Under the pieces are notes generated by a model. That model was not told the DNA's origin and made no database searches. It saw only the letters and a program-made list of their open reading frames with translations. A stretch of 64,000 nt of DNA, from assembly GCA_964036045.1 (NCBI GenBank), contig OZ038378.1:145700001-145764000 (forward strand). The letters are read 5' to 3'. Below are positions 29,304 through 59,269 of this stretch, piece after piece (positions within the stretch are counted from its first letter, which is position 1; each line of letters opens with the position of its first letter). The stretch is from Eutreptiella sp. 'Long Island Sound 2002'. Taxonomy: Eukaryota > Protista > Euglenida. The position numbers were made by a program, and so were the translations under genes.

Positions 29304-29806
29304 TGACATTCTGTAGAGTAGATTTTGTTAATGTGTCGTCTGAATGAGCCCTCGTGAACAATGCACTCAGGGCACCTCATCTGTCACAGCGGAAGGCGCC
29401 GATGGCATTGTCACTGAAGAGCCTTTTGTTTTGATTTCGTTGCTTTGCGACCTTGTGCTCTGCCGTGTACAGGTCAGCATTCAACATCTGCATCCCACTG
29501 CATCCCACTGCATCCCACAGTGGGGGGGTCCTGCATAATCGACCCCACCCCTGCCCCGTATGCCACTGGGGGATTGGTGGGAAGGGCGGGGCTGGGTTTG
29601 GCAAAGGCTGGATCGCATGCACAACACCGAAGCCCCAGCCTCAGGACGACGACCGTTCCATTGCAGGGGGGCCGGGGGAGGGGGGGGGTGCGCAGCAGCG
29701 AGGGCACCGTGGCCGCCCCGTCCCGCAAGACCGTGCAGATCCCGCACCCGTTGGTGCCCAACGTACGCAATGCCTTGTACTGAAATACGACTGACTGCCG
29801 CCGCTT
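29304..29806 (+). repeat. ~500-bp block duplicated at 54788-55291
   Basis: Near-identical direct copies, including an exon-like tail VRSSEGTVAAPSRKTVQIPHP.VPNVRNALY*. Confidence 0.9.
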
Positions 29807-29964
29807 GTGGGGGGGGGGGGTGGAGAAGGGGTACCAAGCCCCCCAGTAAATTCTTCCAGAGCCATGCCGGAGAATACAGGAGACGTGGAAGACGCAGAGG
29901 CAACGGATGTATGCGAAGGGGAAGAGAAGACGCAAAAAAGCGGAGCCGGCGCGGTGCCTCGACG

Positions 29965-30051: not shown

Positions 30052-30345
30052 ATGAGACGAGTTCTTGCCACGGTCGTGGGCCTCCTTCTGGCGCTGCTCT
30101 GCGGGGTCCCGCACAGCCTCCGCCGCCAGCGGCAGCCCCGCGCCGCTCTTGCCTGGGAGGCCCCGGCGGCGCCACCCCGGCCCCTGCCGGCCCCTGATGC
30201 GGCCCTTGCCCTCGCCGTGTGGGCGTCGTACCACGACTATAACTTGGCCGTCAGCCTCAACGGCACGGTGGTGCTGGCCCTCCATCTGGAGAACGTGGCC
30301 GGGGTTCCGATGTACGGGAACCGTCACGCGACCAGTCCGGCGCAA
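30052..30345 (+). CDS. Carbamoyltransferase exon 1
   Basis: MRRVLATVVGLLLALLCG hydrophobic leader; WASYHDYNLAVSLNGTVVLALHLE fits HD.S.A..DG..A.E; donor CAA|gtgcgg. Confidence 0.8.
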
Positions 30346-33300
30346 GTGCGGCAGGTCGCACGTGCTCTGTGCATTGGTTCGGCCCGCGGCAATCGGCAGT
30401 ACAAGTGCTGCTAGCACACAATGAGAGTATCCCCCCCCCCCTCCAGGGATGCGCTCGAGGGGAAAGGTGCCCCAAGAGGGTTTCGAGAGCGGTTGTAAAG
30501 GCGGTTACTGACGATTGGAACAGCGGTTGGGAGGCGCGGTCTGGCGGGTGCAAAGCAGTTGGAGGGCCGTTTGGGGCGGACGGACGTGACCGGCAGGGCA
30601 GACCGTCATGGCAGAGGGGGGGGGGGGTACCTCCCCCCATTCAAGCGCAAGCCTGCCCCCCCCCCCCCCCCAGTGCAAAGTCCCCCAGGGGGCAGGGGGG
30701 CGTCAATGGCCCCAAAAGTCTACGGCCGAAGAAAATCTTTCCTCCGTAAGAATGGCGTTGTAGTCGAAAGGTGCGGTTGGGGTCCTCTCATCCCCCCCCC
30801 CCCCCGCAGGGCGGGGGGCGTTATTTGGTGACCGTTCATCCCGGGGGGTGGGGTGGGGTGGGAGACCAGGGAGTGTCCATGGGGGCGGGGGGCTATGCCC
30901 ACATTTGGTCACACAAACCTGATCCCCTTTGCCTGCACCGCCGACACACAGTCTTGTCGATGTGTCCAACCCGCGCTCCCGGTCAAGACACACCCTGCGA
31001 CTGCACCGGCGGTTCTGACCCCAACGGGGGGGGATGGAGGGGGCTGGGATGCACCCTGCTGGCCGGGGTGGCCGTGGTGATAGGGTGGTGTGTCCCATAG
31101 CGCCTCGTCACCCCCGCCATCCATTCTGGTCGGCTGGCTTCATATGGGCGGCCCCGCCGGGGGGTTGGGGATTGCGGTCCGCAATTGTGCGTGATGCCGC
31201 GATTCATGCTTCAATTCCGTGGTCATGTTGCGGGCCGGCGCAAGCTTCCGCAACTTTCTGCAATTGTTCCGCAATTTTGCGCAATTATTCGGCTATTTTC
31301 CGCAATTGTTCGGCAATTGTCCGCAATTGTTTTGCAATTTTCTGCAATTATTCGGCGATTTTCCGCAATTGGTCGGCAATTTTCCGCATTTGTTCAGCAA
31401 TTTCCCACAATCGTTCTGCAATTTTCCGCAATTGTTCGGCGATTTCCCACAAATTTCTGGCAATTTTCCGCAATTGTTCGGCAATTTTCCGCAACTGTTC
31501 GGCAATTTTCCGCATTTGTTCGGCAATTTCCCGCAAATTTCTGGCAATTTTCCGCAATCGTTCGGGATCTTTCCGCCAGTGGTTGGCAATTTTCCGCAAT
31601 TTTTCAGCAATTTCCCGCAACTGTTCGGCAATTCCCCCCAAATTTCTGGCAATTTTCCGCAATCGTTCGGCACTTTTCCGCAATTCTTCGGCAATTTCCC
31701 GCAATTGTTCCGCTGTTTTCCGCAATTGTTCGGCAATGTCCCGCAAATTTCTGGCAATTTCCCGCAATTGTTCGGCAATTGTCCGCAATTGTTCGGCAAT
31801 TTTTCGCAATTGTTCGGCAATTTCCCGCAATTGGTGGGCAATTTTCCGCATTTCTTCAGCAATTTCCCGCAATTGTGCGGCAATTTCCGCAATTGATTTG
31901 CAATTTCCCCCAATTTTCTGCCATCTTTCTGCAATTGTTCGGCAAAGTCCCGCAATTGTGCGGAAGTTTTCCGCAATTGTTCAGCAATTTCCCGCAGTTG
32001 TCTTGCAACTTTGCGCAATTGTTCGGCAGTTTCGCCAAATTTCTGGCAAATTTCCGCAATCGTTCAGGAATTTTCCGCAATTGATCGGCAATTTTCCGCA
32101 ATTCTTCTGCAATTTCCTGCAATTGTGCAGCAATTTTTCGCAAATTTCTGGCAATTTGTGCAATTCTTCGGCAAATTTCCGCAATTTTTCAGCATCCTTT
32201 CGCAACTGTTTGGCAATTTTCTGCAATTGTTCGGCATTTTTCCGCAATTGTCCAGCAGTTTCCTACAATTTCCTGGCAATTTTCCCGAATTCTTCGGCAA
32301 TTTTTCGCAATTATTCGGCAATTGTTCCGCAATTGTTCCGCAATTTTCCGCAACTATTCGCAATTTTTCGCAACTGTTCGGCAGTTTCCTACAAATGTCT
32401 GGCAATTTCCCGCAATTCGTCGACAATTTTTCGCACTTGTTCGGCAATTTCCCGCAACTGTTCGGCGATTTCTTGCAAATTTCTGGCAATTTTCCGCTAT
32501 TGTTTGGCATATTCACGCATTTGTTCGGCCATTTCCCGCAAATTTGTGGCAATTTTGCGCCATTGTTTGACATTTTCCCGCAAATTTTCCGCAATTATTC
32601 GGTACTTTCCCGCTTATGTTTGGCAAGTTTCCGCAATTGTGCGGCAATTTTACTGAACTGTGCCGCAGTTCTCCGCGATTGTCCGGCAATTTGGCGCAAT
32701 TGTTCGGCAACATTCCGCAATTGGTTGGCAATTTTCCGCAAAGTTCTGCCAATTTTTCGCAATTGTTCGGCAGTTTCCCACAAATTTCTCGCAATTTTCC
32801 GCAATTGTTCGGCAATTTTGGGCAATTGTTCGGCAACTTTCCGCAATTGTTCGGCAACATTCCCCAATTTTTCGGCAAATTTCCGCAATTGGTCGGCAAC
32901 GTTCCGCAATTAGTCGGCAATATTCCGCATTTCTTCAGCAATTTCCCTCAAAGTTCTGCCAATTTTTGGCAATTGTTCGGCAGTTTCCCGCAAATTTCTG
33001 GCAATTTTCCGCAGTTGTTTGCAATTTCCCGCAATTGTTCGGCAATTTCCCTCAAATTTTCTGGCAATTTTCCGCAATTGTTCGGCAATTTTCGGCAATT
33101 GCTCAACATTTTTTTGCAATTGTTCGGCAATTTTCTGCAACTGTTCTGCAATTTTCCGCATTTGTTCGGCAATTTTCCGCAAATTTTCTGGTAATCGTTC
33201 GGCAATTTTCGGTAATTGCTCGGCAATTTTCCGCAATTGTTCGACAATTTTCTGCAGCTGTTCTGCAATTTTCCGCATTTGTTCGGCAATTTTCCGCAAT

Positions 33301-36300
33301 TGGTTGGCAATATCCCACAATTCTTCAGCAATTTCCCTTAAAGTTCTGCCATTTTTTCGCAATTGTTCGGCAGTTTCCGCAAATTTCTGGCAATTTTCCG
33401 CAACTGTTCTGCAATTTTCCGCATTTATTTGGCAACTTCCCGCAAATTTTCTGGCAATTTTCCGCAATTGTTCGGCAATTTTCGGCAATTGCTCGGCAAT
33501 TTTTCGCAATTGTTCGGCAATTTTCCGCAACTGTTCTGCAATTTTCCGCAATTGTTCGGCAATTTTCCGCAATTGGTCGGCAATATTCCGCAATTCTTCA
33601 GCAATTTCCCTTAAAGTTCTGCCATTTTTTCGCCATTGTTCGACAGTTTCCCACAATTTTCTGGCAATTTTCCGCAACTGTTCTGCAATTTTCCGTATTT
33701 GTTCGGCAATTCCCCCAAAATTTCTCGCACTTTTCCGCAATTGTGCGGCAATTTTCGGCAATTGCTCTGCAATTTTTTGCAATCGTTCCGCAATTTTCCG
33801 CAATTGTTCCCCAATTTTCCGCAACTGTTCGGCAATTTCCCGCAATTCTTCGGCAATTTTCTGCACCTTTCTGGCAAATCACCTCGAAGAGGTTTGTTAG
33901 ATCAAGCGCAGGTGCATCCGCCATATACCCTCCTTTTTTGGGGCCATTCGCATAGGATACCCCAAGGTATGGTACCGGATGTTCAACCCCTTGTAAAATC
34001 ATCATTTTAGGAGAGAAAATGATCCCCCAATGAATTTTTCGATTTTGACCCCTTCCCCCCCCCCCCCCCCGAACCCAGGTACCCCTTTTTGGAGGGGTAG
34101 TGTGGGTCGGGGGGGGGGGGGGGGGCTCAAAACTACTTTGCGTATTGAGGCCACTGTGTGTGGATTTGGAACCAGGTCCGGGGCGACTTTTCTCTTGTAC
34201 ATGGACCCCCTAATCCATGGCGGGGGTCCCGGGTCCGAACTCCGGGTACCCCCGGTCACCCCCCCCCCCCCCCGCTCTGGGCCCTTACCGGTGAGGACTT
34301 TCGCCGTTTTCACGCTGGATAAGGCTGTTTTAGTGACACCTGCAAGGTTTCCAAAATTCGACTTTTTCCGAAACCCTTCTGTCGCCCCTAAGATCGGTTT
34401 GGGTGATGATTTAGTGACAATACAGGTACTTGAGCACCCATGGGGACCCACGTAGTGGCCGCTAGGCCCATATAGCCCGAGCCATGGCCCCCCAAAAGCC
34501 CCAAAATTTGGGTTGTGTAGGCTGTTTAGTGACGCCTGCAAGATTTCCAAAAATTTACTTTTCCCGAAACCCTTGTGTCGCCCCTAAGATCGGTTTGGGT
34601 GATGATCTAGTGACAATACAGGTATTTGAGCACCCATGGGGACCCACGTCGTGGCCGCTAGGCCCATATAGCCCGAGCCATGGACTCTTCAAGTTGCCTT
34701 GCCGATAGGCAATAGAATTTTCGACAACTTTCCGCAAATTTTCCCGCGCTTTCCCGCAAATTTTCCGCAACTTTCTGCAATTGTTGAGCATCTTTTTGCA
34801 GTTCTTCCGCAAGTTCCCGCAACTTTTCTTCAACTTCCCGCAATTTTTCTGCAAGTGGATTGGATGCTCCCTGACCGCAACCTGCCAGCCCCCCCCCCCC
34901 CCCGGGCGTTGGAGGGAGGGTCCTCCACCTCCTCCACCTCTCCTCCGTACCACACGCCCACAGGTCTGGCACGCGGCACTGAATCGCACAGCGGAGTACC
35001 TCCAGCGGTACCATGACGTCGTAGCCATGAGGTTCCAGACGTGCATGGTGTGCTTCTGCGAGGAGGGGGGCACCGTCCCTATCCCGCCCCCGCCGCTGCC
35101 CTGCGTCAGCACGCTGGACTGCCCGTACCCGCACCACTTCCTGCACGCGGCCTTGGGCCTCTATGACTCCCCTTTCCGCAACGCCTTGATCGTGACCATC
35201 GACGGGGGCGACCCCTTCGGCAATGAAGGTGCTGTTCCGGTGCGTGCGGCCCGACCCAAGGGGGAGGGATTCCGACCCTTTGGGAGGGGCAGACTCTTCT
35301 GCAGTGCACCTGCGGCGGGAGGGGGGGGGGGGCTTTGGGACTCTTTAAGCGGGGCGCACTGTGCGCTGTGCGTGCGCTGTGCCTGCGCTGTGCAAAACGT
35401 AGGCTTTTTTGGACCCATTTCCCCCGATGGCCAAGGTGACCGCAGCAATTACCGTGTTCCCATACAGAGGACTGCTCAGATTCTTATTCAGTTCAAAACC
35501 TCAGATATTATTATTGATTATTGATTAAAGAATTAATTTAACAGGAAATTATTAGAGGGAGTACTAGACACAGTGCGCGCGCGGTGCGGGTATTAGAGTT
35601 GTTCGGTAGACCCTTTCAGCCAGTTTAGAGGCAACTGCGTCCATTCGGGAGCCTTTTAATGTTCCCAATCTGCATGTGTGCCGTGTTTTTGCTTCTGCAA
35701 TGTCTTTTGTCATGTCCTCCTGTTTCTAGGCCTATTGGTTGCACAATTTTGTTGCAAAATCCTGCCCCCCTGTGTCCACAGAGCTCTCATGGCTCCATGT
35801 CTCTCTCATGGCTTCAGGCAGGGGTGTCAGTCGTTTACACCCGCTCGGCTGGCAGGAGTGTGGCAGCGATAGTGGTCGCTCCCTGCACGTAAGGTGATGA
35901 GTTCGTGGCCATCCGCTACGAGGTTGACGGCCGGGTGTGCGACCATCTCCGTACACCAGCGCATCGAATCCGCGCGGACGTAGAGGTTTATGTGTTGTTT
36001 GCAGGGATGGCTTAACAAAGACAGTGACAGTCACAGCCACAGTGACAGTCACGTTTGGTTGCCTATTATTCTCTGCTGTTTTTTTTTTGCCTTACTACTA
36101 CGCTACCAGGAAATAATAGCAACTATCCAGAACCCACCAGGAATGAATAGCAACCATCCACAACCCACCAGGAAATGATAGCAACCATCCAGAACCCACC
36201 AGGAAATAATAGCAACCATCCAGAACCCACCAGGAAATAATAGCAACCACCCAGAACCCACCAGGAAATAATAGCAACCATCCAGAACTCACCCGGAAAT

Positions 36301-39300
36301 AATAGCAACCATCCAGAACCCACCAGGAAATAATAGCAACCATCTAAAACCTACCCGGAAATAATAGCAACCATCCAGAACCCACCAGGAAATAATAGCA
36401 ACTATCCACAACCCACCAGGAAATAGTGGCAACCATCCACAACCCACCCGGAAAGAATAGCAACCATCCAGAACCCACCCGGAAATAATAGCAACCATCC
36501 AGAACCCACCCGGAAATAATAGCAACCATCTAAAACCCACCATGAAAAAATAGCAACCATCCAGAACCCACCCGGAAATAATAGCAACCATCCAGAACCC
36601 ACCAGGCCATAATAGCAACCATCCAGAACCCACCAAGAAATAATAGCAACTATCCACAACCCACCAGGAAATAATGGCAACTATCCACAACCCACCAGGA
36701 AATAATGGCAACCATCCACAACCCACCTGGAAATAATGGCAACCATCCAGAACCCGACAATAAATAATAGCAACCATCCAGAACCCACCAGGAAATAACA
36801 GCAACCATCCAGAACCCACCCGGAAATAACAGCAACCATCCACAACCCACCCGGAAATAATAGCAACCATCCAGAACCCACCCGGAAATAACAGCAACCA
36901 TCCAGAACCCACCCGGAAATAATAGCAACCATCCAGAACCCACCAGGAAATAATAGCAACCATCCAGAACCCACCAGGAAATAATAGCAACCATCCAGAA
37001 CCCACCGGGAAATAATAGCAACCATCCAGAACCCACCAGGAAATAATAGCAACCATCCGGAACCCACCCGGAAATAATAGCAACCATCCACAACCCACCA
37101 GGAAATACTAGCAACCATCCAGAACCCACCAGGAAATAATAGCAACCATCCACAACGAACCCGGAAATAATAGCAACCATCCACAATTCACCAGGAAATA
37201 ATAGCAACCATCCAAAACTCACCCGGAAATAATAGCAACCATCCAAAACCCACCAGGAAATAATAGCAACCATCCACAACCCACCAGGAAATAATAGCAA
37301 CCATCGAGAACCCACCCGGAAATAATAGCAACCATCCAGAACCCACCAGGAAATAATAGCAACCATCCGGAACCCACCAGGAAAGAATAGCAACCACCCA
37401 GAACTCACCCGGAAATAATAGCAACCATCCAGAACCCACCAGGAAATAATAGCAACCATCTAAAACCTACCCGGAAATAATAGCAACCATCTAAAACCCA
37501 CCATGAAAAAATAGCAACCATCCAGAACCCACCCGGAAATAATAGCAACCATCCAGAACCCACCAGGCCATAATAGCAACCATCCAGAACCCACCAAGAA
37601 ATAATAGCAACTATCCACAACCCACCAGGAAATAATGGCAACCGTCCACAACCCACCCGGAAATAACAGCAACCATCCAGAACCCACCAAGAAAAAATAG
37701 CAACCATCCAGAACTCACCAGGAAATAATAGCAACCATCCAGAACCCACCAGGAAATAATAGCAACCATCCAGAACCCACCGGGAAATAATAGCAACCAT
37801 CCAGAACCCACCAGGAAATAATAGCAACCATCCGGAACCCACCCGGAAATAATAGCAACCATCCACAACCCACCAGGAAATACTAGCAACCATCCAGAAC
37901 CCACCAGGAAATAATAGCAACCATCCACAACGAACCCGGAAATAATAGCAACCATCCACAATTCACCAGGAAATAATAGCAACCATCCAAAACCCACCAG
38001 GAAATAATAGCAACCATCCACAACCCACCAGGAAATAATGGCAACTATCCACAACCCACCAGGAAATAATGGCAACCATCCACAACCCACCTGGAAATAA
38101 TGGCAACCATCCAGAACCCGACAATAAATAATAGCAACCATCCAGAACCCACCAGGAAATAACAGCAACCATCCAGAACCCACCCGGAAATAACAGCAAC
38201 CATCCACAACCCACCCGGAAATAATAGCAACCATCCAGAACCCACCAGGAAATAATAGCAACCATCCACAACCAACCCTGATATAATAGCAACCATCCAC
38301 AACCCACCAAGAAATAATAGCAACCATCCACAACCCACCCGGAAATAATAGCAACCATCCAGAACCCACCAGGAAATAATAGCAACCATCCAGAACCCAT
38401 CAGGAAATAATAGCAACCATCCACAACCAACCCTGATATAATAGCAACCATCCACAACCCACCAAGAAATAATAGCAACCATCCAGAACCCACCAGGAAA
38501 TAATAGCAACCATCCAGAACCCACCAGGAAATAATAGCAACCATCCACAACCCACCCGGAAATAATAGCAATCATCCACAACCCACCCGGAATAAATAGC
38601 AACCATCCGGAACCCACCAGGAAATAATAGCAACCATCCAGAACCCACCCGGAAATAATAGCAACCATATAGAACCCACCAGGAAATAATAGCAACCATC
38701 CAGAACCCACCCGGAAATAATAGCAACCATCCAGAACCCACCAGGAAATAATAGCAACCATCCACAACCCACCCGGAAATAATAGCAACCATCCACAACC
38801 CACCAGGAATGAATAGCAACCATCCAGAACCCACCCGGAAATAATAGCAACCATCCAGAACCCACCCGGAAATAATAGCAACCATCCAGAACCCACCAGG
38901 AAATAATAGCAACCATCCAGAACCCACCAGGAAATAATAGCAACCATCCAAAATCCCACCAGGAAATAATAGCAACCATCCAGAACCCACCCGGAAATAA
39001 TAGCAACCATCCAGAACCCACCCGGAAATAATAGCAACCATCCACAACCCACCCGGAAATAATAGCAACTATCCAGAACCCACCAGGAAATAATAGCAAC
39101 CATCCAGAACCCACCAGGAAATAATAGCAACCATCCAGAACCCACCGGGAAATAATAGCAACCATCCAGAACCCACCAGGAAATAATAGCAACCATCCAG
39201 AACCCACCCGGAAATAATAGCAACCATCTTGAGCCCACCTGGGCATCCAAAAGCCTCCAGAAGCCTCCATGGGGCACCATTTTTGGGGTGTCCCGCGGAT

Positions 39301-51300: not shown

Positions 51301-54300
51301 CCCCCCGAAACGAAAAACCGGCCTCCCCTGGGGGTGTTTTGGGGCCGGTTCTTGAGAAGGGGACCCCCCCCCTCTTCCCCCGTGGGCGTATGCCAACGGT
51401 GGGGGTGGTGTAAGGGCTGGCCGAGGGGTTGTTCTCGGTGCCAAAGGCGCTGCAAGAAATTTGCTTTAAATTTCCCCACGTCTGGGGGTGTAGTGGGTGC
51501 TGTGCAAAAAATGAGGCCCATTCTCAGGACCCCAAATGTTAGAAAAGCCTACGCTAGCCCCCCAAAGCCGGTTCCAAATGCAGGTTCCTACACTTTGTTG
51601 ATCACCAAGAGCATGTTCAATGTGGTGTGCGAGATGTGGGTGGATGTGTTCCAGGTTGAGCCTTACCTCTGGCACAAATTTTGACAGCCCCCGGCAGCCT
51701 CCGGCAGACAGGAAGATGTGCATCCGGCGGCCGCCGGCAGAGATTTGGGTCACATCTGGCGGCCGCCGGCAGAGATTTGGGTCACATCCGGCGGCCGCCG
51801 GCAGAGATTTGGGTCACATCCGGCGGCCGCCGGCGCAGAGGAAACACCACTCTCCTAGAAGCATAAGTAGACGTTTCTGGGAGGGCAGCGGGGCCGGAAA
51901 CTTGCGGCCACCCACCTCCTTGGCAAGGGGAGGCACACTTGGATACCGTCGCCCCGGACGAAGATGAGTGTGGATGCATCCGGCAGAGAATTGTGTCGCA
52001 TCCAGCGGCCTCCGGCGCGGAGGTGCGCTCTCCTCCGGCGGCCATCGGTACGGCTCATCTCTGATGTGTTCCTCTTTCCAGCGACACAAATACATGACAA
52101 GGTTCATGGTCACCACCCTGCTGTCACTAGGAAACCAACGTCCTCTGTGGATTCTATGTATGGGCCAGCACTCCAGCCCTGAAGTTGCACTCTCGGATCG
52201 TCGCCCATCACCGGCCCTGGGCGGGGGGGGGGGGCGGGCCGGTCCTAGCACGCAACCCCCCCCCCCGAGTTTCGGGAGATAGTGGGGGGCTGGGTCACAG
52301 CGGGAGCGGTTGTAGCCCCCCCCCCCCCGTGTCACCAGCATTTCCTTCCCAGCAATGGCCCACAGGGAGCTGCGTACTGTTCCGATTGCCCTAGCAAGTA
52401 GGATTGACAGCCATTCCGTGTCCCAAAGCTGGGCTTGCTCAAAGTGAGTATGGGATGCCCACTACAAAGAGCTCCTCAAGGCCCTTGGTGATTCAAATTA
52501 GGATACCCTCATACCAAAAGCCAGCAACTGAATGTTCTCTCCCTCAATGTCTTGCTGATCAGTGCCCCTGTTGCCTTCCTTAGGGGTATTGTCTGATCCT
52601 GCAGGGGCTGTGCAGGTTGGTTTGCACGGGGGGACTGACCGGCGACCATGCGACATTCGATAGCCCAGAGGGTGAGCTCAAGCCAAGGTCTTGCACAGTG
52701 GCAGCCTCCATCGGCAGGGTTAAATACGGTAGAAATCCTACCCCCCCCCCCCTTGCGCATGCACGGCCTTGTCTAAGCACGGGTGGGCGTTGAACCGCCG
52801 CTTTGAGGAAATTTTGGGACCGCTGTTTGTGTGGTCCAGAATGGAGGATTGGGTGTTTGTGGGGCGTTTGTACAGGGAAAGAGGGGCTCAGTCATGTCTG
52901 TGATGGTGCATTGTGTTCATAATAACATTGGCGTTGAACCGCCGTTTTTGGCCTGACTTCTGGACCGCGGCCGTGCTTGCGCAAGGGGGGGGGGGTACAT
53001 TGTGAGAATCTGGGTATCCTGTGCAATGTGCTCAACCGTCCAGCACTGAAGTTCTGAAACCTCTCTTACAGTGAGCAACCTTCAATGAGACAAAGGGATT
53101 TTCTGAATTGGGACATAATTAACACCTGAGTTTCAAGGATTGGGACGCATTGAATAGCGGCATATTTTGGCGATTGACATTTTTCCACGGACATTTTTTT
53201 CACCCCTCAGTGTGTGAACACAGAGAGTCTACGGGGGTGATTCCTAAGGTTGATGGCTGTTGTGGGGGCCAGGCAATCGGTTTCAAAAGTCGGTGGGTAG
53301 GTCCTGGCCTTCAACCGCCGTGTTCCCCCCTTTGTTGTATGCGTACCTGTGCACTCATGATTTGCTGTGAGATGTGCTGCATTACGCGCGCGCGCGCCGC
53401 ACCCCCAGCGCGTGCCGCACCCCCACGGCCCGCACTTGTCCTCAGGTGACGGGCTCGTCACCTCCGGGGGATCGGCACGCAACATTTGGCTGAACGCGGC
53501 GCTGCACCGGGCCACAGGGCTGCCCGTCCACACCCCGTCCCTCCCGGGCGATGAGAGCATGGCCGTGGCGATGCTGTACGCCCACGCCCGCCCCCCGGCC
53601 GCCGCGCCCCCCCTCCCGCTGGGCCTCCCCCTCGAGGACCTGCCCCGACTCGAGGCGTTGGCGGGGCGTACGGCGCCACAAAGGCCGCCCCCTCTCGGGT
53701 CTGTCCTGTCGCGCGGTGACCGCCCTGACTGCGTGCGGAACGTTGTGGGCAGTCAGAGACAGGCCCTCGCTTAGTGCAGTGCACACCCCACGGAAGGGGG
53801 CGTGAGTGTGTGTTAGCGATGTCAGTGAGACATCACACGAAGGTGCTCGCTGATGGAGAGGGATGACTTGGTTGAACCCAGGTTGCAGTGAGCCCCGAGC
53901 ACCAGTCGCTGAATGTGTCCTGTCTGTGTGTTGCTGTGTGTTGGGTGTGTTAGTGTCTGATCCTGGTCTGTGCTGCAGTTTGCGCTGCAGGATCTGAAGA
54001 GTGCTCTGCAAATACTCCAAGTGTGCACCCACTGTTTGTATTGTACTGTATTGTATACTGCAAGAGAGTGTGTGTGCGCGGGGGGGGGGGGGGGTTTGAC
54101 TGCAGCGGTCTGGGATTGGTGGACTGGGGGATCCACTGGGGGTGGGGGCCGTGGTTAGAAGCATGAGAGCGTTGAACGATGTGTCCGATGTTCTGTAGAG
54201 TAAATCACCTTGAAGAGGGTTGTTAGATCAAGCGCAGGTGCAGGCGCCATATACCACCCTTTTGGGGGTCATTCGCAAAGCATACCCCCAAGCTATGGTA

Positions 54301-57300
54301 TCAGATGTCTGTCCCCTTGTAAAATCATCAATTTATGACAGAAAATGATCCCCCAATGATTTTTCGATTTTGATCCTCTAACCCCCCGTACCTGAGTGCG
54401 CCTTTTGGGGGGGCTGGGGTGGGGGGGGGGGGGTCAAAACTACTTTGCTTATTGCGGCCGCTGTGTGTGGATTTGGACCCAGGTCCGGGGCGACTTTTCT
54501 CTTGTACATGGACCCCCTGACCCATGGCGGGGGTCCCGGGTCCGAACTCCGGGTACCCCCCGTCGCCCCCCCCTGTGGGCCCTTGCCGGTTAGGACTTAG
54601 TGACACCTGCAAGGTTTCCAAAATTCAATTTTTTCCAAATCCCTTCTGTTGCCCCTGGATGGATTAAGGTGATGATTTGTGACAATACGGGTACTTCGGC
54701 GCCCATGGGGACCCACGCAGTGGCCGCTAGGCCCATATGGCCCGAGCCATGGCCCCCCCCAAGCCCCAAAATTGCTGTTGTTGAGGCTGACATTCTGTAG
54801 AGTAGATTTTGTTGATGTGTCGTCTGAATGAGCCCTCGTGAACAATGCACTCAGGGCACCTCATCTGTCACAGCGGAAGGCGCCGATGGCATTGTCACTG
54901 AAGAGCCTTTTGTTTTGATTTCGTTGCTTTGCGACCTTGTGCTCTGCCGTGTACAGGTCAGCGTTCAACATCTGCATCCCACTGCATCCCACTGCATCCC
55001 ACAGTGGGGGGGGTCCTGCATAATCGACCCCACCCCTGCCCCGTATGCCACTGGGGGATGGTGGGAAGGGCGGGGCTGGGTTTGGCAAAGGCTGGATCGC
55101 ATGCACAACACCGAAGCCCCAGCCTCAGGACGACGACCGTTCCATTGCAGGGGGGCCGGGGAAGGGGGGGGGTGCGCAGCAGCGAGGGCACCGTGGCCGC
55201 CCCGTCCCGCAAGACCGTGCAGATCCCGCACCCGTCTGTGCCCAACGTACGCAATGCCTTGTACTGAAATACGACCGACTGCCGCCGCTTGCGTCGGCCG
55301 GCGACGGCCCAGTGCCCACTTCCGACAGCCTGTCCTGTGCCAAATAAAGTGCACGCACAGTACTGCAAATGGGGCAATGGCATGGGACATGTACACCGGA
55401 GACCATGGCACTTCAGGGCGAAGTTGTGTTCCCCATGATCAAGGGTAGAAAGTTCGGAAAATGTCAGAGCATTCGTTTTTGAATGGTGCCCTGTGCCCCC
55501 CTCACGCACACACCCACATTCACACGTGTGCCCACAAAAACAAACACAAACACAACACAAACACAGACACAAACACAGACACAGACACAGTCACAGACAC
55601 AGACACAGACACAGACACAGACACAGACACGCAAACGCAAACGCAAACGCAAACACAAAGCAAACGCAAACGCCAACACAAACACAAACACAAACACAAA
55701 CACAAACACAAACACAAACACAAACACAAACACAAACACAAACACAAACACAAACACAAACACAAACACAAACACAAACACAAACACAAACACACACCCA
55801 CACACCCACACACCCACACCCCACGCTCACACCTCCACCACAGTCCCCCAATAGCACACCGACAAGCTTGATAGACTGGTCAACCCCCCCCCCCCCAAAG
55901 CCCTGGGTGCCAGAGCACACGTGCTGTCAGGTAGGCCTACAGCCCTGTGCACAGGAGCACAATAGCTGACCCCCACAGCCCTGTGTGCCAAGGGATACAA
56001 GCTGGTAATACCCCTACGCCCTGTGTGCCGGGAGCACAAAACTGGTGTTAACCCTGCCGTTTGCGCCAGAGCCCACAGAGCCCTGTGCGCCGGAGCTCAG
56101 ACTTCAATGGAGAAGCCAAATATGGAAGAAAACATCAAACGAAAACGGATTACCCCCCGTCATTCCCCATCCGGCCCTCAGCTGCTGGGGCACCTCACGT
56201 CTTGGAAGGGACAACTTGTTCCGAAACACTCTTTGCCTCTCAATGTATGGGGCCGCACCGTGCGCTGTGCCCGCGCTGTGCGAAACGTAGGCTATTTTGG
56301 ACCCGTTCCCCCCCGATGGCCAAGGGGACGGCGGTAACCACCGAGTTCCCAGACGCAGGGCGGCTCAGATTCTTACTCAGTCCCAAAACTCAGATAATGA
56401 GTCAACACAACTGATGTTTCCCACTGAAAAGCCAGAACGCTGTCTCTGCCTTATGGACGTATGCCCCCCCGATGGTGTTCAGGGTGGTACCAGGAACGCT
56501 GACGTACCATTGGGCGCCTTGCGGACGCTGTGCCGCACCGCCCCCTCGCCTTCAAAGTGAGCAGCGTGGGGATCGTCTTGAGGTACGTGTGTTTGGGTAC
56601 CTCGAGTGCCCCCCCTTCTGCCCTCCGCCCCCGACGAGGGACCTCTTTCGTTGGATCGAACTTCGTAATCGTCGTTTAGGCCAGTCCGGCGGGGGGACCC
56701 CCCCCCCCCAAAGGACCCCCCCCCACCTCCGCTGTCTGCTCAACCGCCCCCTCCCCCCCCCCCCCCACCTCCGCTGTCTGCTCAACCGCCCCCCCTCCCC
56801 CCTCGTCCCCCCGCTGCCCCCCCCCCCCCCCCCGCGGCCCCGGTTCTGCAGGTGGCGCGCCTTCTGGCAGCCGGGCAAGTCCTGGCGGTCGTCAGGGGCC
56901 GGCAGGAGACCGGGCCGCAGACCCGGGGATACCGCAGCGTCGTCGCGCTGCCCGTGGCCCGCGGACTGCGGCAGGCGTTTCTGCAGCGGCAGAACCGCCC
57001 CTGGGCGGCGTATCTGGACGTGATACTGGACGTCGCCTCGTTCAAGGACGTCATGCCCGCTGCCGGAGGGTACGTGATGTGAAGGGGGGCTGTGGGTCTG
57101 AGAAGGGGGGGGGGCTTCCAGGTCCGGTACGCAGGGGTCTCGGCAGCATTTTGGCGCCAGAGGCACTGGAAGAGGCCCATGGCGGGGGGGGGTATGCTTT
57201 TTGCACCCCCCCCCCTGCCTGTGTGTTTGTTTGTGTTGTGTGTGGTGTGGTGTGTGGTGTGTGTACTGTGTGTTGTAGGTGGTGTGTCCATTCTGCAGAA

Positions 57301-57314
57301 ACACCCGCCCCCCC

Positions 57315-57352
<38 letters not shown>

Positions 57353-59032
57353 GCCTGCCCGCCCGCCCGCCGGCTGGTCGGCCCGCACGCACGTACGCAC
57401 GCACGCACGCACCCACGCACACACACAAACACAGGGGATTGGATTGGATTGGCAAGGAGGGTTTTCTTTACTAGTTTCCCTTGAACTAGCCCCCCCCCCC
57501 CCCAGGGGTACCCCAGCTCCGGAGGACTCTCGTACCCTACCCATACCATTCCTTACCACACTGTCTCCCGTGGGTCTCCCGTGCTGTCTGTACCCTCTCG
57601 CTGCGGGTTCCACCCGCTGTCCCTTTATCAATCCAATCCGTCTTGCCATTTGCACCCTCACCTCCCTTGAGCACGCACAGAAACCCACAATTGCACCATC
57701 GCGCTTCGGGTTTATCACATCGGGTTCATCGATGACTCTGGGTCTCTCTGTTTATTTCAGTTTATGTCCTCCAGTACAGTTGCTGGTACCCCCTCCCCCC
57801 CCTTACGGCGCCCACGTAGGCCCCCCATAATACCCCTTACCCCTTAAGCATTACCACCTTGGAACAGCTTCTGTCCCGTCGGCATATACTTCGTCTCCAC
57901 TTCTGTGAAGGAGGGAGAAACGGGCTGGGGGCACGCCATGCACGCCCTCTTCATCTGTGGTTAGTAGGACCCGTTGGTAGCCCTCCCACTCCACTAATTT
58001 GCACCTGTACCCCCCCCCCCTCCCACTTCCGTAAACAATGTCCAGTGCACCGATTCCCCTCAATGTTTGCGTCGCACTGCCTCCACCTCTTTGTGGGTTG
58101 TAGGGCACCCCTTCCAGCAGGGCTGTCCTTCGGGAGTAAGACATTTCTTGTTCCTTTTTTCCCAGGAAGGACGGCCTGAGGTTTTGGGTGGCAGGATCGC
58201 TGCCAACCGACAGCGCAGGCCTGTGCTTTTACCCGCAAGGAGGAGGGACCACCCCCCCCCCCCCAGACCCAAGGGACCATCGTGGGAAAACATGAAAATT
58301 ACAAGAGGGACAATCTGGTCGGACCATTTGTGGTACACAAACTTTTGGGTCCCTCCCCCCTCCCTTTCAGCACAGCCCTGCGACGGCGGTTGGCTGGAAA
58401 CTGTCCGGTGCAATGCTGAGGCCCCGCGCCCGTTTTTTTGATTTGGCACTGAGCACAGCCCTTTCCACCGCCGCTCTCGGACAGGGATGTATTGGAAGGG
58501 GGAGAGCCCCCCCCCCCCCCCCCTCCAGGTGGCCCAGGCACTGTCCCCCTAATGGCAGGTGCCAGCTTCAACGGCATTTGTAACTGACAGTAACCGCCCC
58601 CAACCGCTTCGGCAACCTCCTCCAACCGCCTGCCTAACCGCCTCGGAGGTACCTTCCCTTACGATGCTCCCTGCTCTCGGATTCTCCCGCCTCCACAGGT
58701 TCGGCAAGCTGGACTTGGGGCCTGCCGAGTGCCAGCAGCTCCCAGAGCTCTGCTTCCCGCCCGCCCCGGGCTTCACGCTGCCCCCCGACATCGCGCAGTA
58801 CCGGACGCTGGGGCCGGAGGAGGCGTGGTACCGCGCGGTCCTGCGGGAGCTGCAGCCGCGGGTCCCGCGCCCGGCGCTGGTGCTGGCCCCGTTCGTGGCC
58901 AAGGGGGACGGCCTGCGGGTGCGCAGCGCGGCGGCGGCGGTGCGGGAGTGGGCGGCGGACGGCGGCATCGCAGCGCTTGTGGTCGACGACTGGCTGTTCG
59001 CCTGGAAGGGGCGGCACGTGAATGGGACGTGA
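30052..59032 (+). CDS. NodU/CmcH/TobZ-family carbamoyltransferase-like protein with N-terminal signal/anchor; 7 exons, ~624 aa
   Basis: Model 30052-30345, 34964-35228, 40896-41080, 46700-46954, 53409-53732, 56852-57069, 58699-59032 totals 1875 nt, is phase-consistent and all GT-AG; family motifs occur in the correct order. Confidence 0.85.
30975..31190 (+). repeat. ~210-bp dispersed repeat, second copy at ~48040-48248
   Basis: Shared aagacacaccctgcgactgca..gcggtccgcaattgtgcg. Confidence 0.85.
31243..33872 (+). repeat. Satellite of 10-11-bp subunits (ccgcaatttt / ccgcaattgtt / cggcaattt)
   Basis: Directly visible; a further short tract at 34715-34850. Confidence 0.95.
33878..34715 (+). repeat. 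CACCTCGAAGAG-family element with tandem ~185-bp units; related copy at 54205-54780
   Basis: Shared atcacct..ttagatcaagcgcagg start and gggtccgaactccgggtacc core. Confidence 0.75.
34964..35228 (+). CDS. Carbamoyltransferase exon 2
   Basis: HHFLHAALGLYDSPFRNALIVTIDGG fits HHxAHAxxAFYxSPF..DGxG; ccacag|GTC and GAAG|gtgctg. Confidence 0.9.
35522..39394. mobile_element. Putative non-autonomous TIR element carrying the 31-bp satellite, TTAT TSD
   Basis: tgattaaa.. / ..tttaatca ends flanked by ttat on both sides; interrupts a repeat that is contiguous at 56250-56520. Confidence 0.5.
36105..39228 (+). repeat. 31-bp tandem satellite (ccaggaaataatagcaaccatccagaaccca)n, ~100 copies
   Basis: Directly visible; variant units recur at offsets of 961 and 775 bp. 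Confidence 0.97.
40620..40853 (+). mobile_element. ~234-bp CCAACCG-rich insertion flanked by a 53-bp direct duplication
   Basis: 40567-40619 matches 40854-40906 with 1 mismatch. Confidence 0.7.
40896..41080 (+). CDS. Carbamoyltransferase exon 3
   Basis: CTNVWLGDRRNHSITKL..LGVSYAVFSGL; cacag|GA (phase 1) and AAG|gtctgc. Confidence 0.75.
42030..42397 (+). repeat. Minisatellite (cacatcctacacactgtgat..)n
   Basis: Directly visible. Confidence 0.9.
42400..43180 (+). repeat. 13-bp minisatellite (ccccttatgacca)n
   Basis: Directly visible. Confidence 0.95.
43183..43462 (+). repeat. 280-bp repeat with an inverted copy at 46983-47262
   Basis: agcactggtactgcaatc..cttgagccatatgc is reverse complementary to gcacatggctcaag..gattgcagtaccagtgct; adjacent 43540-43780 is an inverted copy of 28345-28580. 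Confidence 0.85.
46700..46954 (+). CDS. Carbamoyltransferase exon 4
   Basis: FLATLQSVAETALEEAV fits D.AAS.Q...E; gcacag|TGC and CGG|gtacgc. Confidence 0.75.
48525..49795 (+). mobile_element. MITE-like element with 18-bp inverted repeat CACCTCAAAGAGAGGTTG, internal insert and tRNA-like pair
   Basis: Perfect IR 48525-48542 / 49778-49795; flanking sequence is shared with other copies, so the true ends may lie further out. Confidence 0.7.
49494..49654. other. Convergent pair of tRNA-derived units (not functional tRNAs)
   Basis: Forward unit gtcgaatggtaa..ggttcgattcc; reverse unit gtggctgaatggtaa..ggcggttcc. Confidence 0.55.
49917..50527 (+). mobile_element. MITE-like element with 18-bp inverted repeat CACCTCGAAGAGAGGTTG and tRNA-like pair
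   Basis: Perfect IR 49917-49934 / 50510-50527. Confidence 0.7.
50238..50387. other. Convergent pair of tRNA-derived units
   Basis: Forward ggtccaatggtaa..ggttcgaatccc; reverse tggccgagtggtaa..ggttcgaacccc (A-box and B-box like). Confidence 0.6.
51714..51835 (+). repeat. ~32-bp tandem repeat (catccggcggccgccggcagagatttgggtca)x3-4
   Basis: Directly visible. Confidence 0.9.
53409..53732 (+). CDS. Carbamoyltransferase exon 5 (both boundaries less certain)
   Basis: LVTSGGSARNIWLNAAL..VHTPSLPGDESMAV fits GGxAxN..N..PxxxD.G; acceptor and donor chosen for phase compatibility. Confidence 0.75.
55535..55800 (+). repeat. Compound (CACAGA)n/(CACAAA)n microsatellite
   Basis: Directly visible. Confidence 0.95.
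56852..57069 (+). CDS. Carbamoyltransferase exon 6 (start of the YrdC-like C-domain)
   Basis: VARLLAAGQVLAVVRGRQETGPQTRGYRSVVALP fits A.LL..G....QGR.EFGPRALG.RSILA.P; ctgcag|GTG and GG|gtacgt. Confidence 0.9.
58699..59032 (+). CDS. Carbamoyltransferase exon 7 with stop codon
   Basis: AQYRTL..WYRAVLREL..PALVLAPFVAKGD..AAV..IAALVVDDWLF fits the family C-terminus; ccacag|G (phase 2). Confidence 0.85.
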
Positions 59033-59269
59033 CGGCCGCGATCGAGGGCGGGCCTGGACACGAGCCAGTCCCGTGATCCTTCGGGCCGTCACGGTCGTCG
59101 GGAGTGGGGGTGAGCAACGGCGATGTCCGGGCAGGAGGGGAGGTGGGGGGGGGGGGGGTAAGTTGATGACCTTCAGCTGCGGTTGGCAATCACACAGCCC
59201 CGTGGCCCGTTCGCAGGTTTCTGATTTGTGCAGAGCCACGGAGGCGAAGGATTCACACCATTTCCCACC

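What the first reader, a model, noticed from the sequence alone, without database searches (positions are those of the whole stretch)
30052..59032. Carbamoyltransferase-like host gene with a secretory leader and a degenerate adenylation domain
Seen: the Kae1-like metal ligands are kept (HHFLH, IDGG, PGD), but the YrdC-like KxR and NTSFN motifs read AFLQRQNRP and VLAPFV, and the N-terminus is a hydrophobic signal/anchor. Known: NodU/CmcH/TobZ are mostly bacterial cytosolic O-carbamoyltransferases that form carbamoyl-adenylate in the C-domain. Inference: an intron-bearing, possibly horizontally acquired enzyme moved to the ER/Golgi lumen, perhaps modifying glycans with a different donor, or a pseudoenzyme.
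Basis: partly seen in the sequence, partly recalled or inferred. Interest (0 to 1): 0.75.

Follow-up and report, generated by a model that had tools for sequence, protein, structure and literature searches.

The report
Membrane-anchored half-dead carbamoyltransferase gene in Euglena
This Euglena gene, split into seven pieces over 29 kb, encodes a relative of bacterial sugar-modifying enzymes that has a membrane/secretion leader, keeps its transfer site and has lost its own fuel-making site. It belongs to a large, undescribed family found across euglenids.

Summary
On the + strand, 30052-59032, seven GT-AG exons (586 codons, no internal stop, GC3 0.88 against 0.55 intron GC) rebuild a complete CmcH/NodU/TobZ-type carbamoyltransferase: 170 bits to a canonical-only profile, best shuffle 5.

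The protein starts with a 16-residue hydrophobic leader and a Pro/Ala-rich stem. It keeps the catalytic His, the HxxxH, DGG, GGxxxN and PGD motifs of the Kae1-like half. The YrdC-like half has lost the KxR/SxN tetrad, HxDGxAR and NTSFN.

The gene is not a one-off. It falls in a euglenid clade (Euglena gracilis, E. longa, Jenningsia, Neometanema and intronless genomic copies) with the same leader and the same erosion. That clade also holds leader-bearing members with an intact adenylation half: Entosiphon, and by its published sequence E. gracilis EG_transcript_5832, which proteomics has detected. The family is therefore old in euglenids, not a recent transfer.

Best reading: a lumen-facing transferase, or a partner subunit, that depends on an adenylate made in trans. 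A pseudoenzyme is the main rival.

No RNA evidence was found for this copy, and localisation is inferred only.

The scan has noted four similar genes elsewhere in this genome.

The parts
30052..30354 (+). Exon 1 (101 codons). ATG at 30052; hydrophobic leader aa 4-19 (30061-30108); Pro/Ala/Arg-rich stem aa 20-51 (30109-30204); start of the Kae1-like domain with the catalytic His in SYHD (30226-30243); sequon NGT (30259-30267). An alternative donor lies at 30345.
   Evidence: ORF list, sequence, hydropathy, intron-1 scoring with the mixed HMM, coordinates. An AG at 30045-46, 5 nt before the ATG, could be a spliced-leader acceptor; this is inference only.
34964..35228 (+). Exon 2. Holds the helix with sequon NRT (34982-34990), the metal-ligand motif PHHFLHA (35129-35149), and TIDGGD with the metal-ligand Asp (35195-35212).
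   Evidence: tblastn hits at 35081-35323; HMM hit E 1.2e-9; acceptor ccacag| and best junction score.
40896..41008 (+). Exon 3 (CTNVWLGDRRNHSITKLSDHVTLKLCLGVSYAVFSGL), with sequon NHS (40928-40936) in the same alignment column as sequons of the E. longa and E. gracilis paralogues. The 3' boundary is uncertain; an alternative donor lies at 41080.
   Evidence: Weak HMM hit. The exon is needed to keep the reading frame. It adds 12 bits (canonical HMM) or 29-42 bits (euglenid HMM) over absent or shuffled versions and exceeds all 100 shuffles. Sequon column.
46700..46961 (+). Exon 4, the helical middle of the Kae1-like domain (..AARTFLATLQSVAETALEEAVARW..).
   Evidence: HMM hit to profile positions 202-275; junction scoring, acceptor cgcacag|.
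53446..53702 (+). Exon 5. SGGSARN nucleotide-site motif (53463-53483); LPGDES with the fourth metal ligand Asp (53541-53558); inter-domain linker.
   Evidence: Best-conserved exon. HMM E 6e-19; 21 hits at E<=1e-3 in 1.84 billion representatives; tblastn hits.
56852..57078 (+). Exon 6, the start of the YrdC-like domain. GRQETGPQTRGYRS (56897-56938) is partly kept. FLQRQNRPWAAY (56978-57013) replaces lN..K-x-R-E..RPFAP. The 3' boundary is uncertain; the alternative is 57073/58709.
   Evidence: Pfam Carbam_trans_C E 2.4e-6; PDB GdmN/NovN/TobZ hits; alignment.
58699..59032 (+). Exon 7, the rest of the YrdC-like domain. FTLPPDIAQYRTL (58772-58810) replaces HxDGTARxQTV. LVLAPFVAKGDG (58877-58912) replaces NTSFN..G.P. 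Terminal sequon NGT, then stop TGA at 59030-59032.
   Evidence: HMM hit E 5.9e-6; alignment; motif scan.
30355..58698 (.). Six introns of 4609, 5667, 5691, 6484, 3149 and 1620 nt (GC 0.55). They are filled with satellites and interspersed repeats; no other recognisable protein family was found.
   Evidence: Tandem arrays; intron sizes and composition; ten longest ORFs give no Pfam hit.

Best explanation
This is a real, apparently intact seven-exon Euglena nuclear gene. It encodes a divergent paralogue of the class III (CmcH/NodU/TobZ) O-carbamoyltransferases.

The protein has a 3-residue basic tail, a 16-residue hydrophobic segment and a roughly 32-residue Pro/Ala-rich stem, followed by the two-domain catalytic body. 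That is the layout of a type II, or secreted, endomembrane enzyme.

The Kae1-like half normally takes carbamoyl-AMP and transfers the carbamoyl group to a hydroxyl. Here it keeps its catalytic His, its four metal ligands and its nucleotide-site motifs. The YrdC-like half normally makes carbamoyl-AMP from ATP and carbamoyl phosphate. Here it keeps its fold-defining residues but has lost the ATP-binding KxR/SxN tetrad and the HxDGxAR and NTSFN motifs, so it cannot make its own adenylate.

Most likely (inferred) it works in the lumen of the secretory pathway as the transfer half of a split system. It would receive carbamoyl-AMP, or a related acyl-adenylate, from a co-localised paralogue with an intact adenylation half (the EG_transcript_5832 / Entosiphon type), either by diffusion or inside a hetero-oligomer. 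It would then place the group on a glycan or another secreted acceptor.

Shown: gene structure by homology, family membership, motif states, family-wide pattern, phylogenetic position.
Inferred: topology, donor, acceptor, expression.
For: - Gene and family. There is a collinear 170-bit match to a canonical-only HMM. All six introns have GT-AG solutions, and six of six acceptors read ..CAG. CDS GC3 is 0.879 against 0.549 intron GC.
- Fold. The nearest paralogue, P0001, folds with pLDDT 88, and its top Foldseek hits are TobZ, GdmN, NovN and VtdB over both domains (TM 0.72-0.77, E 1e-32).
- Motif states. Literature: the GdmN metal ligands are H133/H137/D156/D333 and the base is H27 (PMC9633730); the KxR/SxN tetrad is essential for ATP binding (PMC6004061); the two-step mechanism is described in PMC6022934. 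PDB titles list the TobZ H14N, K443A and S530A variants.
- Differential erosion. The window keeps 24 of 43 canonical-invariant columns in the N-domain but only 11 of 35 in the C-domain. All seven degenerate paralogues show the same bias.
- Selection on the transfer site. Across those seven paralogues, the five catalytic or metal residues are kept in almost every case, while about 58% of other invariant N-domain columns survive.
- Leader. Kyte-Doolittle maximum 2.67. The AF2 model of the paralogue shows helix 2-25 followed by a disordered stem.
- Lumen. The window has 4 sequons against 0.8 expected; the family has 39 against 13.2. Some sequons share alignment columns across paralogues that are under 30% identical.
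- Possible donor in trans. E. gracilis EG_transcript_5832 has the same kind of leader with intact KVR, HYDGSAR and NTSFN, and was detected by proteomics in an organelle fraction. Entosiphon P0182 has the same intact state. There is a precedent: TC-AMP passes from Sua5 to Qri7/Kae1 without contact (PMC6004061).
- Glycan context. A canonical member of the same subfamily, P0025, sits beside a polysaccharide deacetylase and a GT2.
Against: - No transcript evidence exists for this copy. Nothing more than 47% identical to exon 5 was found among 1.84 billion representatives, a collection that includes the E. gracilis transcriptome proteins. No RNA run holds the stretch.
- The branch is very long (2.2-2.6 substitutions per site). 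There is a 3-residue insertion in the DGG loop, and PGD-ES replaces PxD-xG, so the transfer site may also be impaired.
- No carbamoyl phosphate, ATP or adenylate supply is known in the euglenid Golgi.
- Charged residues flank both sides of the hydrophobic segment, so topology is not settled.
- Cleaved signal peptide against signal anchor could not be decided without a dedicated predictor.
- Two intron boundaries (introns 3 and 6) are ambiguous.
Confidence: 0.55

Rival explanations
1. Pseudoenzyme. The protein is made and folds, but no longer catalyses transfer. It would serve as a glycan- or ligand-binding protein, or as a regulatory or scaffolding partner (for example a dead subunit paired with an active paralogue).
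For: - The adenylation half is dead.
- 19 of 43 otherwise invariant N-domain columns have changed, including PGD-ES in place of PxD-xG and an insertion in the DGG loop.
- Branch lengths are 3 to 7 times those of canonical members.
- One family member, the Neometanema protein P0019, has even lost a metal-ligand Asp.
Against: - The catalytic His, both His ligands and both Asp ligands are kept here and in nearly all degenerate paralogues, although about 42% of other invariant N-domain columns are lost. That points to selection on the transfer site.
- The nucleotide-site motif GGxxxN is kept.
Confidence: 0.25
2. Silent or decaying gene copy. It would be an unexpressed paralogue in a repeat-rich region whose open frame has not yet been broken.
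For: - No matching protein was found in the collections that hold the E. gracilis transcriptome. No RNA holder was found.
- Introns of 1.6-6.5 kb are packed with satellites.
- A 97.9%-identical 514-bp repeat lies 245 bp upstream of the ATG.
- It has one of the longest branches in the family trees.
Against: - 586 codons across seven exons carry no stop or frameshift.
- Consensus splice sites are present at all six introns.
- There is strong codon-position periodicity (GC1/2/3 = 0.74/0.51/0.88) against 0.55 in the introns.
- The catalytic residues are retained.
- The RNA runs on hand are tiny, about 4 Mb each.
Confidence: 0.15
3. The leader is the signal-peptide part of a Euglena plastid-targeting (class II) presequence, so the protein works in or on the plastid rather than in the ER/Golgi.
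For: The paralogue EG_transcript_5832 is 'Chloroplast enriched' in the organelle comparison of PMC7403612. It is also listed in the plastid proteome with SL, SP and 'class II' (bioRxiv 10.1101/573709). Plastid proteins in Euglena do travel through the ER and Golgi.
Against: - In 5832 the catalytic domain starts about 5 residues after the hydrophobic segment. In the window gene the linker is 32 residues, Pro/Ala-rich, with one Ser and no Thr. Neither leaves a transit-peptide-like region.
- The same kind of leader is present in Entosiphon, Neometanema and Jenningsia, which I know as heterotrophic euglenids without plastids; their lifestyle was not checked here.
- The same plastid list contains SP-only lysosomal and Golgi-type hydrolases, which suggests endomembrane carry-over.
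- TargetP had placed these paralogues in mitochondria alongside mannosidase II and glucosidase II.
Confidence: 0.1

Closest known systems
TobZ (Streptoalloteichus tenebrarius), GdmN, NovN, VtdB: solved class III O-carbamoyltransferases (Pfam Carbam_trans_N + Carbam_trans_C)
   Same: Same two-domain order, Kae1-like then YrdC-like. Same catalytic His, HxxxH, D and D metal ligands, and GGxxxN motif. The paralogue model superposes on TobZ over both domains (TM 0.72-0.77).
   Different: - It has an N-terminal hydrophobic leader and stem.
- The KxR/SxN tetrad, HxDGxAR and NTSFN are lost.
- It is eukaryotic, intron-bearing and one of a multigene family.
- About 20% identity.
Leader-bearing euglenid carbamoyltransferases with an intact C-domain: Entosiphon sulcatum EP01012_P010441 (P0182) and E. 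gracilis EG_transcript_5832
   Same: - P0182 falls in the same euglenid clade (99/94). EG_transcript_5832 was not in the tree and is grouped here by its P0182-like sequence.
- Same kind of leader placed directly before the Kae1-like domain.
   Different: They keep GPRALGHRS, K-x-R..RPVAP, H-x-DG-x-AR and NTSFN, so they should make their own carbamoyl-AMP. Their branches are short.
Degenerate euglenid paralogues: E. longa EP00668_P034749 (P0001), E. gracilis EG_transcript_4949 (P0023), Jenningsia P0024, Neometanema P0019, and intronless copies P0004, P0012 and P0018 from ENA assembly ERZ25074135
   Same: Leader in all full-length copies, intact Kae1-like site, eroded YrdC-like motifs. The window gene groups with the E. 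longa / E. gracilis 4949 / Jenningsia branch (95/89).
   Different: Only 25-32% identical to any of them. Some of those copies are intronless, whereas this one has six long introns. No transcript is known for this one.
Kae1/TsaD/Qri7 with Sua5/TsaC (t6A synthesis)
   Same: The same two folds. In that system the adenylate (TC-AMP) is made by one protein and used by another, which is the mode proposed here for the degenerate paralogues (PMC6004061).
   Different: That system uses separate proteins, tRNA as acceptor and a cytosolic or mitochondrial location. Here the dead YrdC-like half stays fused.
NodU/NolO (rhizobial Nod-factor 6-O-carbamoyltransferases) and the 'NolO-like' proteins of echinoderms, cnidarians, Trichoplax and dinoflagellates
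   Same: - The listed animal and dinoflagellate proteins belong to the same subfamily; rhizobial NodU/NolO themselves were not compared here.
- A sugar acceptor is known for NodU.
- A subfamily member (P0025) lies next to NodB-like and NodC-like genes.
   Different: - Those proteins have intact adenylation motifs.
- The animal members lack a leader, while the dinoflagellate members have signal peptides.

Membership tests
Class III O-carbamoyltransferases (CmcH/NodU/TobZ; Carbam_trans_N + Carbam_trans_C) | Collinear Kae1-like N-domain followed by a YrdC-like C-domain | tested here: met
   The spliced model matches the canonical-only HMM in one stretch (profile 4-520 of 532, aa 54-580) at 170 bits; 200 shuffles reach at most 5.0. 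Exon 6 reaches Pfam Carbam_trans_C at the cut-off.
Class III O-carbamoyltransferases (CmcH/NodU/TobZ; Carbam_trans_N + Carbam_trans_C) | Metal site of two His (HxxxH) and two Asp (GdmN H133/H137/D156/D333) | tested here: met
   PHHFLHA, TIDGG and LPGDES align with the invariant columns. Literature: PMC9633730.
Class III O-carbamoyltransferases (CmcH/NodU/TobZ; Carbam_trans_N + Carbam_trans_C) | Catalytic base His near the N-terminus (TobZ H14 / GdmN H27, 'HD' motif) | tested here: met
   SYHDYN aligns with HDA/HDS of the canonical members.
Class III O-carbamoyltransferases (CmcH/NodU/TobZ; Carbam_trans_N + Carbam_trans_C) | YrdC-type KxR/SxN tetrad for ATP binding (K-F-R-E and NT-S-F-N; TobZ K443, S530) | tested here: not met
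   In the alignment the K reads Q and the R is kept, while S and N read P and V. There is no SxN in the whole C-domain, and the only KxR is KGR near the C-terminal end. The tetrad is essential according to PMC6004061.
Class III O-carbamoyltransferases (CmcH/NodU/TobZ; Carbam_trans_N + Carbam_trans_C) | GPRALGxRS and HxDGxARxQTV motifs of the C-domain | tested here: not met
   The window reads GPQTRGYRS (partly kept) and FTLPPDIAQYRTL (lost). It keeps 11 of 35 canonical-invariant C-domain columns.
Class III O-carbamoyltransferases (CmcH/NodU/TobZ; Carbam_trans_N + Carbam_trans_C) | Forms carbamoyl-AMP from ATP and carbamoyl phosphate and transfers the carbamoyl group to a hydroxyl | not testable with these tools
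   Needs an enzyme assay.
Euglenid leader-bearing, C-domain-eroded carbamoyltransferase paralogues (unnamed) | Falls in the euglenid clade | tested here: met
   Careful IQ-TREE run: the euglenid clade has support 99/94, and the window groups with Jenningsia, E. longa and E. gracilis 4949 at 95/89. The branch is long, so the exact position is unsure.
Euglenid leader-bearing, C-domain-eroded carbamoyltransferase paralogues (unnamed) | N-terminal hydrophobic leader before the catalytic domain | tested here: met
   Kyte-Doolittle maximum 2.67 at aa 4-18. The full-length euglenid copies score 2.0-3.1 (the truncated P0018 has no leader), against at most 2.11 in 67 leaderless homologues.
Type II Golgi/ER lumenal enzyme | Short basic tail, a TM segment of about 16-20 residues, a Pro-rich stem, and a lumenal N-glycosylated catalytic domain | tested here: inconclusive
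   The layout fits. Sequons are about three-fold enriched and some are positionally shared. However, Arg residues flank both sides of the hydrophobic segment, and neither a dedicated predictor nor an experiment was available.
Euglena plastid class II presequence | Signal peptide followed by a transit-peptide-like region rich in hydroxylated residues | tested here: not met
   The linker has 32 residues, is Pro/Ala-rich, and has one Ser and no Thr. The same kind of leader occurs in Entosiphon, Neometanema and Jenningsia, which I take from my own knowledge to lack plastids.

The most novel reading that the evidence does not exclude
Euglenids run a split carbamoylation (or related acyl-adenylate) system inside the secretory pathway. 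One leader-bearing paralogue with an intact YrdC-like half (the EG_5832 type) would make the adenylate. A radiating set of 'half-dead' paralogues, this gene among them, would act as acceptor-specific transferases that decorate glycans or secreted metabolites. That would be a eukaryotic endomembrane modification system with no described counterpart.
Probability: 0.15. Interest if true: 0.8.

Novelty: new variant of a known kind. Interest (0 to 1): 0.55.

Why it matters
Class III carbamoyltransferases are known as leaderless enzymes, mostly of bacterial natural-product and Nod-factor pathways, in which two fused active sites are linked by a tunnel.

Here a whole protist lineage has done three things to that enzyme. 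It has put it behind a secretion or membrane leader. It has multiplied it. In most copies it has kept only the transfer site.

If these copies are active, they would point to an unknown O-carbamoyl or acyl modification of euglenid glycans or secreted products. They would also give a natural example of a fused two-step enzyme reverting to supply of the intermediate in trans. If they are inactive, they are a clean case of family-wide pseudoenzyme evolution.

There is also a practical consequence. In published E. gracilis organelle tables, paralogues of this family (EG_transcript_5080 and 5832) are filed as 'mitochondrial' by TargetP, and one (5832) as 'plastid', which is probably misleading.

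Tried and rejected
- RNA evidence. The one run search found only DNA holders (X1-X4) and three tiny RNA-guess runs holding none of the words.
- Read laying. On 56300-59100, X5-X7 gave nothing, and X1 gave low-depth DNA with repeat-driven joints. No junction could be confirmed.
- Pfam on single exons. Only exon 6 scores. The N-domain exons needed family-specific HMMs.
- PDB search with the raw exon-2 ORF gave only spurious synaptobrevin hits caused by a Pro-rich read-through.
- Word search with an alignment of the degenerate paralogues was swamped by bacterial candidates and did not return more euglenid copies.
- The ESM Atlas search confirmed only the family.
- Literature searches for Euglena, NodU, carbamoyltransferase, Golgi and HGT found no description of this family.
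- My first junction for intron 1 (30294/34919, acceptor gggag|) was rejected in favour of 30354/34964 (acceptor ccacag|), which restores the conserved LE..RYF-like segment.
- Other genes inside the introns: none recognisable.
- The spliced protein itself could not be sent to the structure, word-search or atlas tools because it has no reference. A paralogue, P0001, was folded instead. All work on the spliced model was done in scripts.

Full report
**Setting**

Earlier notes of this scan identify the genome as Euglena. My own results agree with that.
- The nearest relatives of the gene are transcript-derived proteins of E. longa, E. gracilis, Jenningsia and Neometanema.
- Contigs of ENA assembly ERZ25074135 that carry paralogues share interspersed repeats with the window at 70-84% identity.

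The window is GC-rich (0.43-0.62 in 2-kb bins) and full of satellites.

Yes.
- Stop-free stretches on the + strand contain the quoted strings.
- One stretch hits Pfam Carbam_trans_C (E 2.4e-6, 27.6 bits against a cut-off of 27), and hits the solved carbamoyltransferases GdmN, NovN and TobZ.
- A search of 1.84 billion representative proteins with the best-conserved exon (53436-53720) returned 21 hits, none above 47% identity. Several are full-length proteins.
- With these as guides, tblastn and family HMMs located seven collinear coding blocks.

**Gene model**

For each intron I listed all frame-compatible, stop-free GT..AG pairs and scored the joined peptides against family HMMs. The resulting model has these exons:
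- 30052-30354
- 34964-35228
- 40896-41008
- 46700-46961
- 53446-53702
- 56852-57078
- 58699-59032

It encodes 586 aa with a single terminal stop. All six acceptors read pyrimidine-rich ..CAG.

Two boundaries are ambiguous: the donor of intron 3 (41008 or 41080), and intron 6 (57078/58699 or 57073/58709).

My first choice for intron 1 was replaced, because 30354/34964 has a proper acceptor and restores a conserved segment.

Exon 3 is short and weakly conserved. It is nevertheless needed to keep the frame, and it raises the HMM score above all 100 shuffled versions.

The CDS has GC1/2/3 of 0.74/0.51/0.88 against 0.55 in the introns, which is the signature of real coding sequence.

The whole model matches an HMM built only from canonical family members, in one stretch covering profile positions 4-520 of 532, at 170 bits. 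200 shuffles reach at most 5.0.

No RNA evidence could be obtained, so the junctions remain predictions. Conventional GT-AG introns are the majority type in E. gracilis (PMC6366073).

**Motif states**

In alignments with degenerate and canonical relatives the window protein keeps:
- the catalytic base His (SYHD);
- the HxxxH pair (PHHFLHA);
- the DGG Asp, with a 3-residue insertion after it;
- GGxxxN (SGGSARN);
- the PxD Asp (LPGDES).

These correspond to the GdmN residues H27, H133, H137, D156 and D333 (PMC9633730).

In the C-domain:
- GRxExGPRALGxRS reads GRQETGPQTRGYRS;
- lN..KxRE..RPFAP reads FLQ-RQNRPWAAY (K to Q in that alignment);
- HxDGTARxQTV reads FTLPPDIAQYRTL;
- NTSFN reads LAPFV.

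There is no S-x-N in the whole C-domain, and the only K-x-R is KGR near the C-terminal end. The KxR/SxN tetrad is essential for ATP binding in this fold (PMC6004061). TobZ K443A and S530A were crystallised with unreacted substrates (entry titles).

Of the columns invariant in ten canonical members of the same subfamily, the window keeps 24 of 43 in the N-domain and 11 of 35 in the C-domain.

**It is a family trait**

The following proteins all carry the same eroded C-domain motifs, and all but the truncated P0018 also carry an N-terminal hydrophobic segment:
- E. longa P0001 (a complete transcript ORF);
- E. gracilis EG_transcript_4949 (P0023);
- Jenningsia P0024;
- Neometanema P0019;
- P0004, P0012 and P0018; P0004 and P0018 were traced to ERZ25074135, where they are uninterrupted ORFs.

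A fragment, P0017, is intermediate: KGR and HGGTAR are kept while NTSFN is lost.

All seven degenerate proteins lose more of the C-domain than of the N-domain. Mean identity among them is 0.23 (C) against 0.26 (N), whereas canonical members show the reverse, 0.50 against 0.45. The five catalytic or metal residues are kept in nearly all of them, while only about 58% of other invariant N-domain columns survive. This argues for selection on the transfer site.

The scan has noted four other such genes in this genome. I did not examine them.

**Intact, leader-bearing relatives exist in the same lineage**

Entosiphon P0182 has a leader and fully canonical motifs.

The published sequence of E. gracilis EG_transcript_5832 reads MRPRSALAALAVLGVLLLAGLWPRQR, followed at once by the catalytic domain, with intact KVR..RPVAP, HYDGSAR and NTSFN (PMC7403612 supplement). 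It was detected by proteomics as 'Chloroplast enriched', and it is listed in the plastid proteome with an SL and a signal peptide only.

TargetP-based tables had filed EG_transcript_5080 and 5832 as mitochondrial, next to mannosidase II and glucosidase II. These automated placements are therefore unreliable.

**Phylogeny**

In a 78-row tree, the euglenid rows together with P0002/25/26 and P0005/22 are separated from other bacterial carbamoyltransferases with support 100.

A careful 54-row tree shows:
- all euglenid rows, including the canonical Entosiphon protein, form a clade (99/94);
- that clade lies inside a 21-row group (99/96) with dinoflagellates and unnamed, probably protist, sequences;
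- animals plus Chromosphaera form another clade;
- myxobacteria form another clade;
- the window groups with Jenningsia, E. longa and E. gracilis 4949 (95/89);
- degenerate rows have end branches of 1.4-3.8, against 0.68 for Entosiphon.

A single origin of the erosion is neither shown nor excluded. The gene is therefore not a recent horizontal acquisition. The ultimate origin of the subfamily is open, since it is patchily distributed across eukaryotes, myxobacteria and archaea.

**Structure**

The spliced protein has no reference, so it could not be folded. The paralogue P0001 was folded with a 76-row alignment: pLDDT 88, pTM 0.85. The model shows a helix at residues 2-25, a low-confidence stem at about 26-89 with only short helical stretches, and both domains at pLDDT above 90. 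Foldseek ranks TobZ first (E 1.7e-32, TM 0.72-0.77 over about 583 columns), then GdmN, NovN and VtdB. The eroded C-domain is therefore still predicted to adopt the YrdC-like fold. The caveat is that the alignment is dominated by canonical sequences.

**Topology**

The N-terminus reads MRR, then VLATVVGLLLALLCGV (16 hydrophobic residues), then a 32-residue stem with 9 Pro and 4 Arg, then the catalytic domain. This resembles a type II Golgi enzyme or an uncleaved signal anchor. There is no classical -3/-1 cleavage site, although P0004 has one (AQA|GG).

N-glycosylation sequons are enriched. The window has 4 against 0.8 expected and the family 39 against 13.2. Canonical members have 1.7 against 1.1, and at least the eleven aligned carry the NTS of NTSFN as one of their sequons. 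N201 of the window shares its alignment column with sequons of P0001 and P0023, and other columns are shared between Euglena and Jenningsia or P0018.

This favours a lumenal catalytic domain but does not prove it.

A plastid presequence is unlikely. The linker is short and poor in hydroxylated residues. The same kind of leader also occurs in Entosiphon, Neometanema and Jenningsia, which I take from my own knowledge to lack plastids.

**Mechanism**

Shown: an intact-looking transfer site fused to a dead adenylation site, behind a leader.

Inferred: the protein cannot make carbamoyl-AMP. If it is active, it must receive an adenylate from elsewhere. The obvious candidate is the intact leader-bearing paralogue, either by diffusion (as TC-AMP passes from Sua5 to Qri7; PMC6004061) or within a hetero-oligomer (GdmN is a homodimer; PMC9633730).

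A glycan acceptor is suggested only by context. NodU acts on a sugar, and a canonical member of the same subfamily, P0025, lies beside a polysaccharide deacetylase and a GT2.

Rivals are a pseudoenzyme, a silent copy, or plastid targeting.

**Novelty**

I found no description of this family in the searchable literature. Its members appear only as auto-annotated 'K00612 carbamoyltransferase' in supplementary tables. I rate it as a new variant of a known kind. This particular gene is one divergent member without expression evidence.

Noticed in passing
window 31246-33865; 36105-39239; 42030-42393; 42402-43182; 55533-55805: The introns hold large tandem arrays: a 21-bp unit with about 125 copies (intron 1), a 31-bp unit with about 101 copies at 91% match (intron 2), 24-bp and 13-bp arrays (intron 3), and (CACAAA)n (intron 5). 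In the ORF list the 21-bp and 31-bp arrays appear as long, repetitive open reading frames on both strands.
   Followed up: partly
window 29295-29807 and 54779-55291: A 514-bp direct repeat at 97.9% identity. One copy ends 245 bp upstream of the gene's ATG and the other lies in intron 5. It looks like a young interspersed element.
   Followed up: partly
window 43212-43397 (+) and 47048-47233 (-): Near-identical 61-aa ORFs in opposite orientation, in introns 3 and 4. They are probably inverted copies of one repeat family.
   Followed up: no
L003:6533-11346 (JGI metagenome contig Ga0453689_0001210): A canonical member of the same subfamily (P0025) sits between a polysaccharide deacetylase and a 739-aa GT2, a NodB/NodU/NodC-like trio. 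DnaB, radical SAM and FGE-sulfatase genes lie nearby.
   Followed up: no
L001:3001-4662 and L002:3001-4302 (ENA ERZ25074135): Paralogues lie as uninterrupted ORFs in a Euglena-like genome assembly, one of them beside a reverse-transcriptase ORF. Some family members may therefore be retrocopies.
   Followed up: no
proteins P0151-P0170 (not in the window): Echinoderms, a jellyfish, Trichoplax and the ichthyosporean Chromosphaera carry leaderless 'NolO/NodU-like' carbamoyltransferases with intact motifs. They form one well-supported clade (100/100), so this is an animal-lineage enzyme with no known role.
   Followed up: partly
published tables for E. gracilis (PMC6366073 suppl. 7; PMC7403612 suppl. 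9; bioRxiv 10.1101/573709 suppl. 2): The paralogues EG_transcript_5080 and 5832 are filed as mitochondrial by TargetP, and 5832 as plastid by fraction enrichment. The 5832 sequence has only a signal-type leader directly before the catalytic domain.
   Followed up: partly
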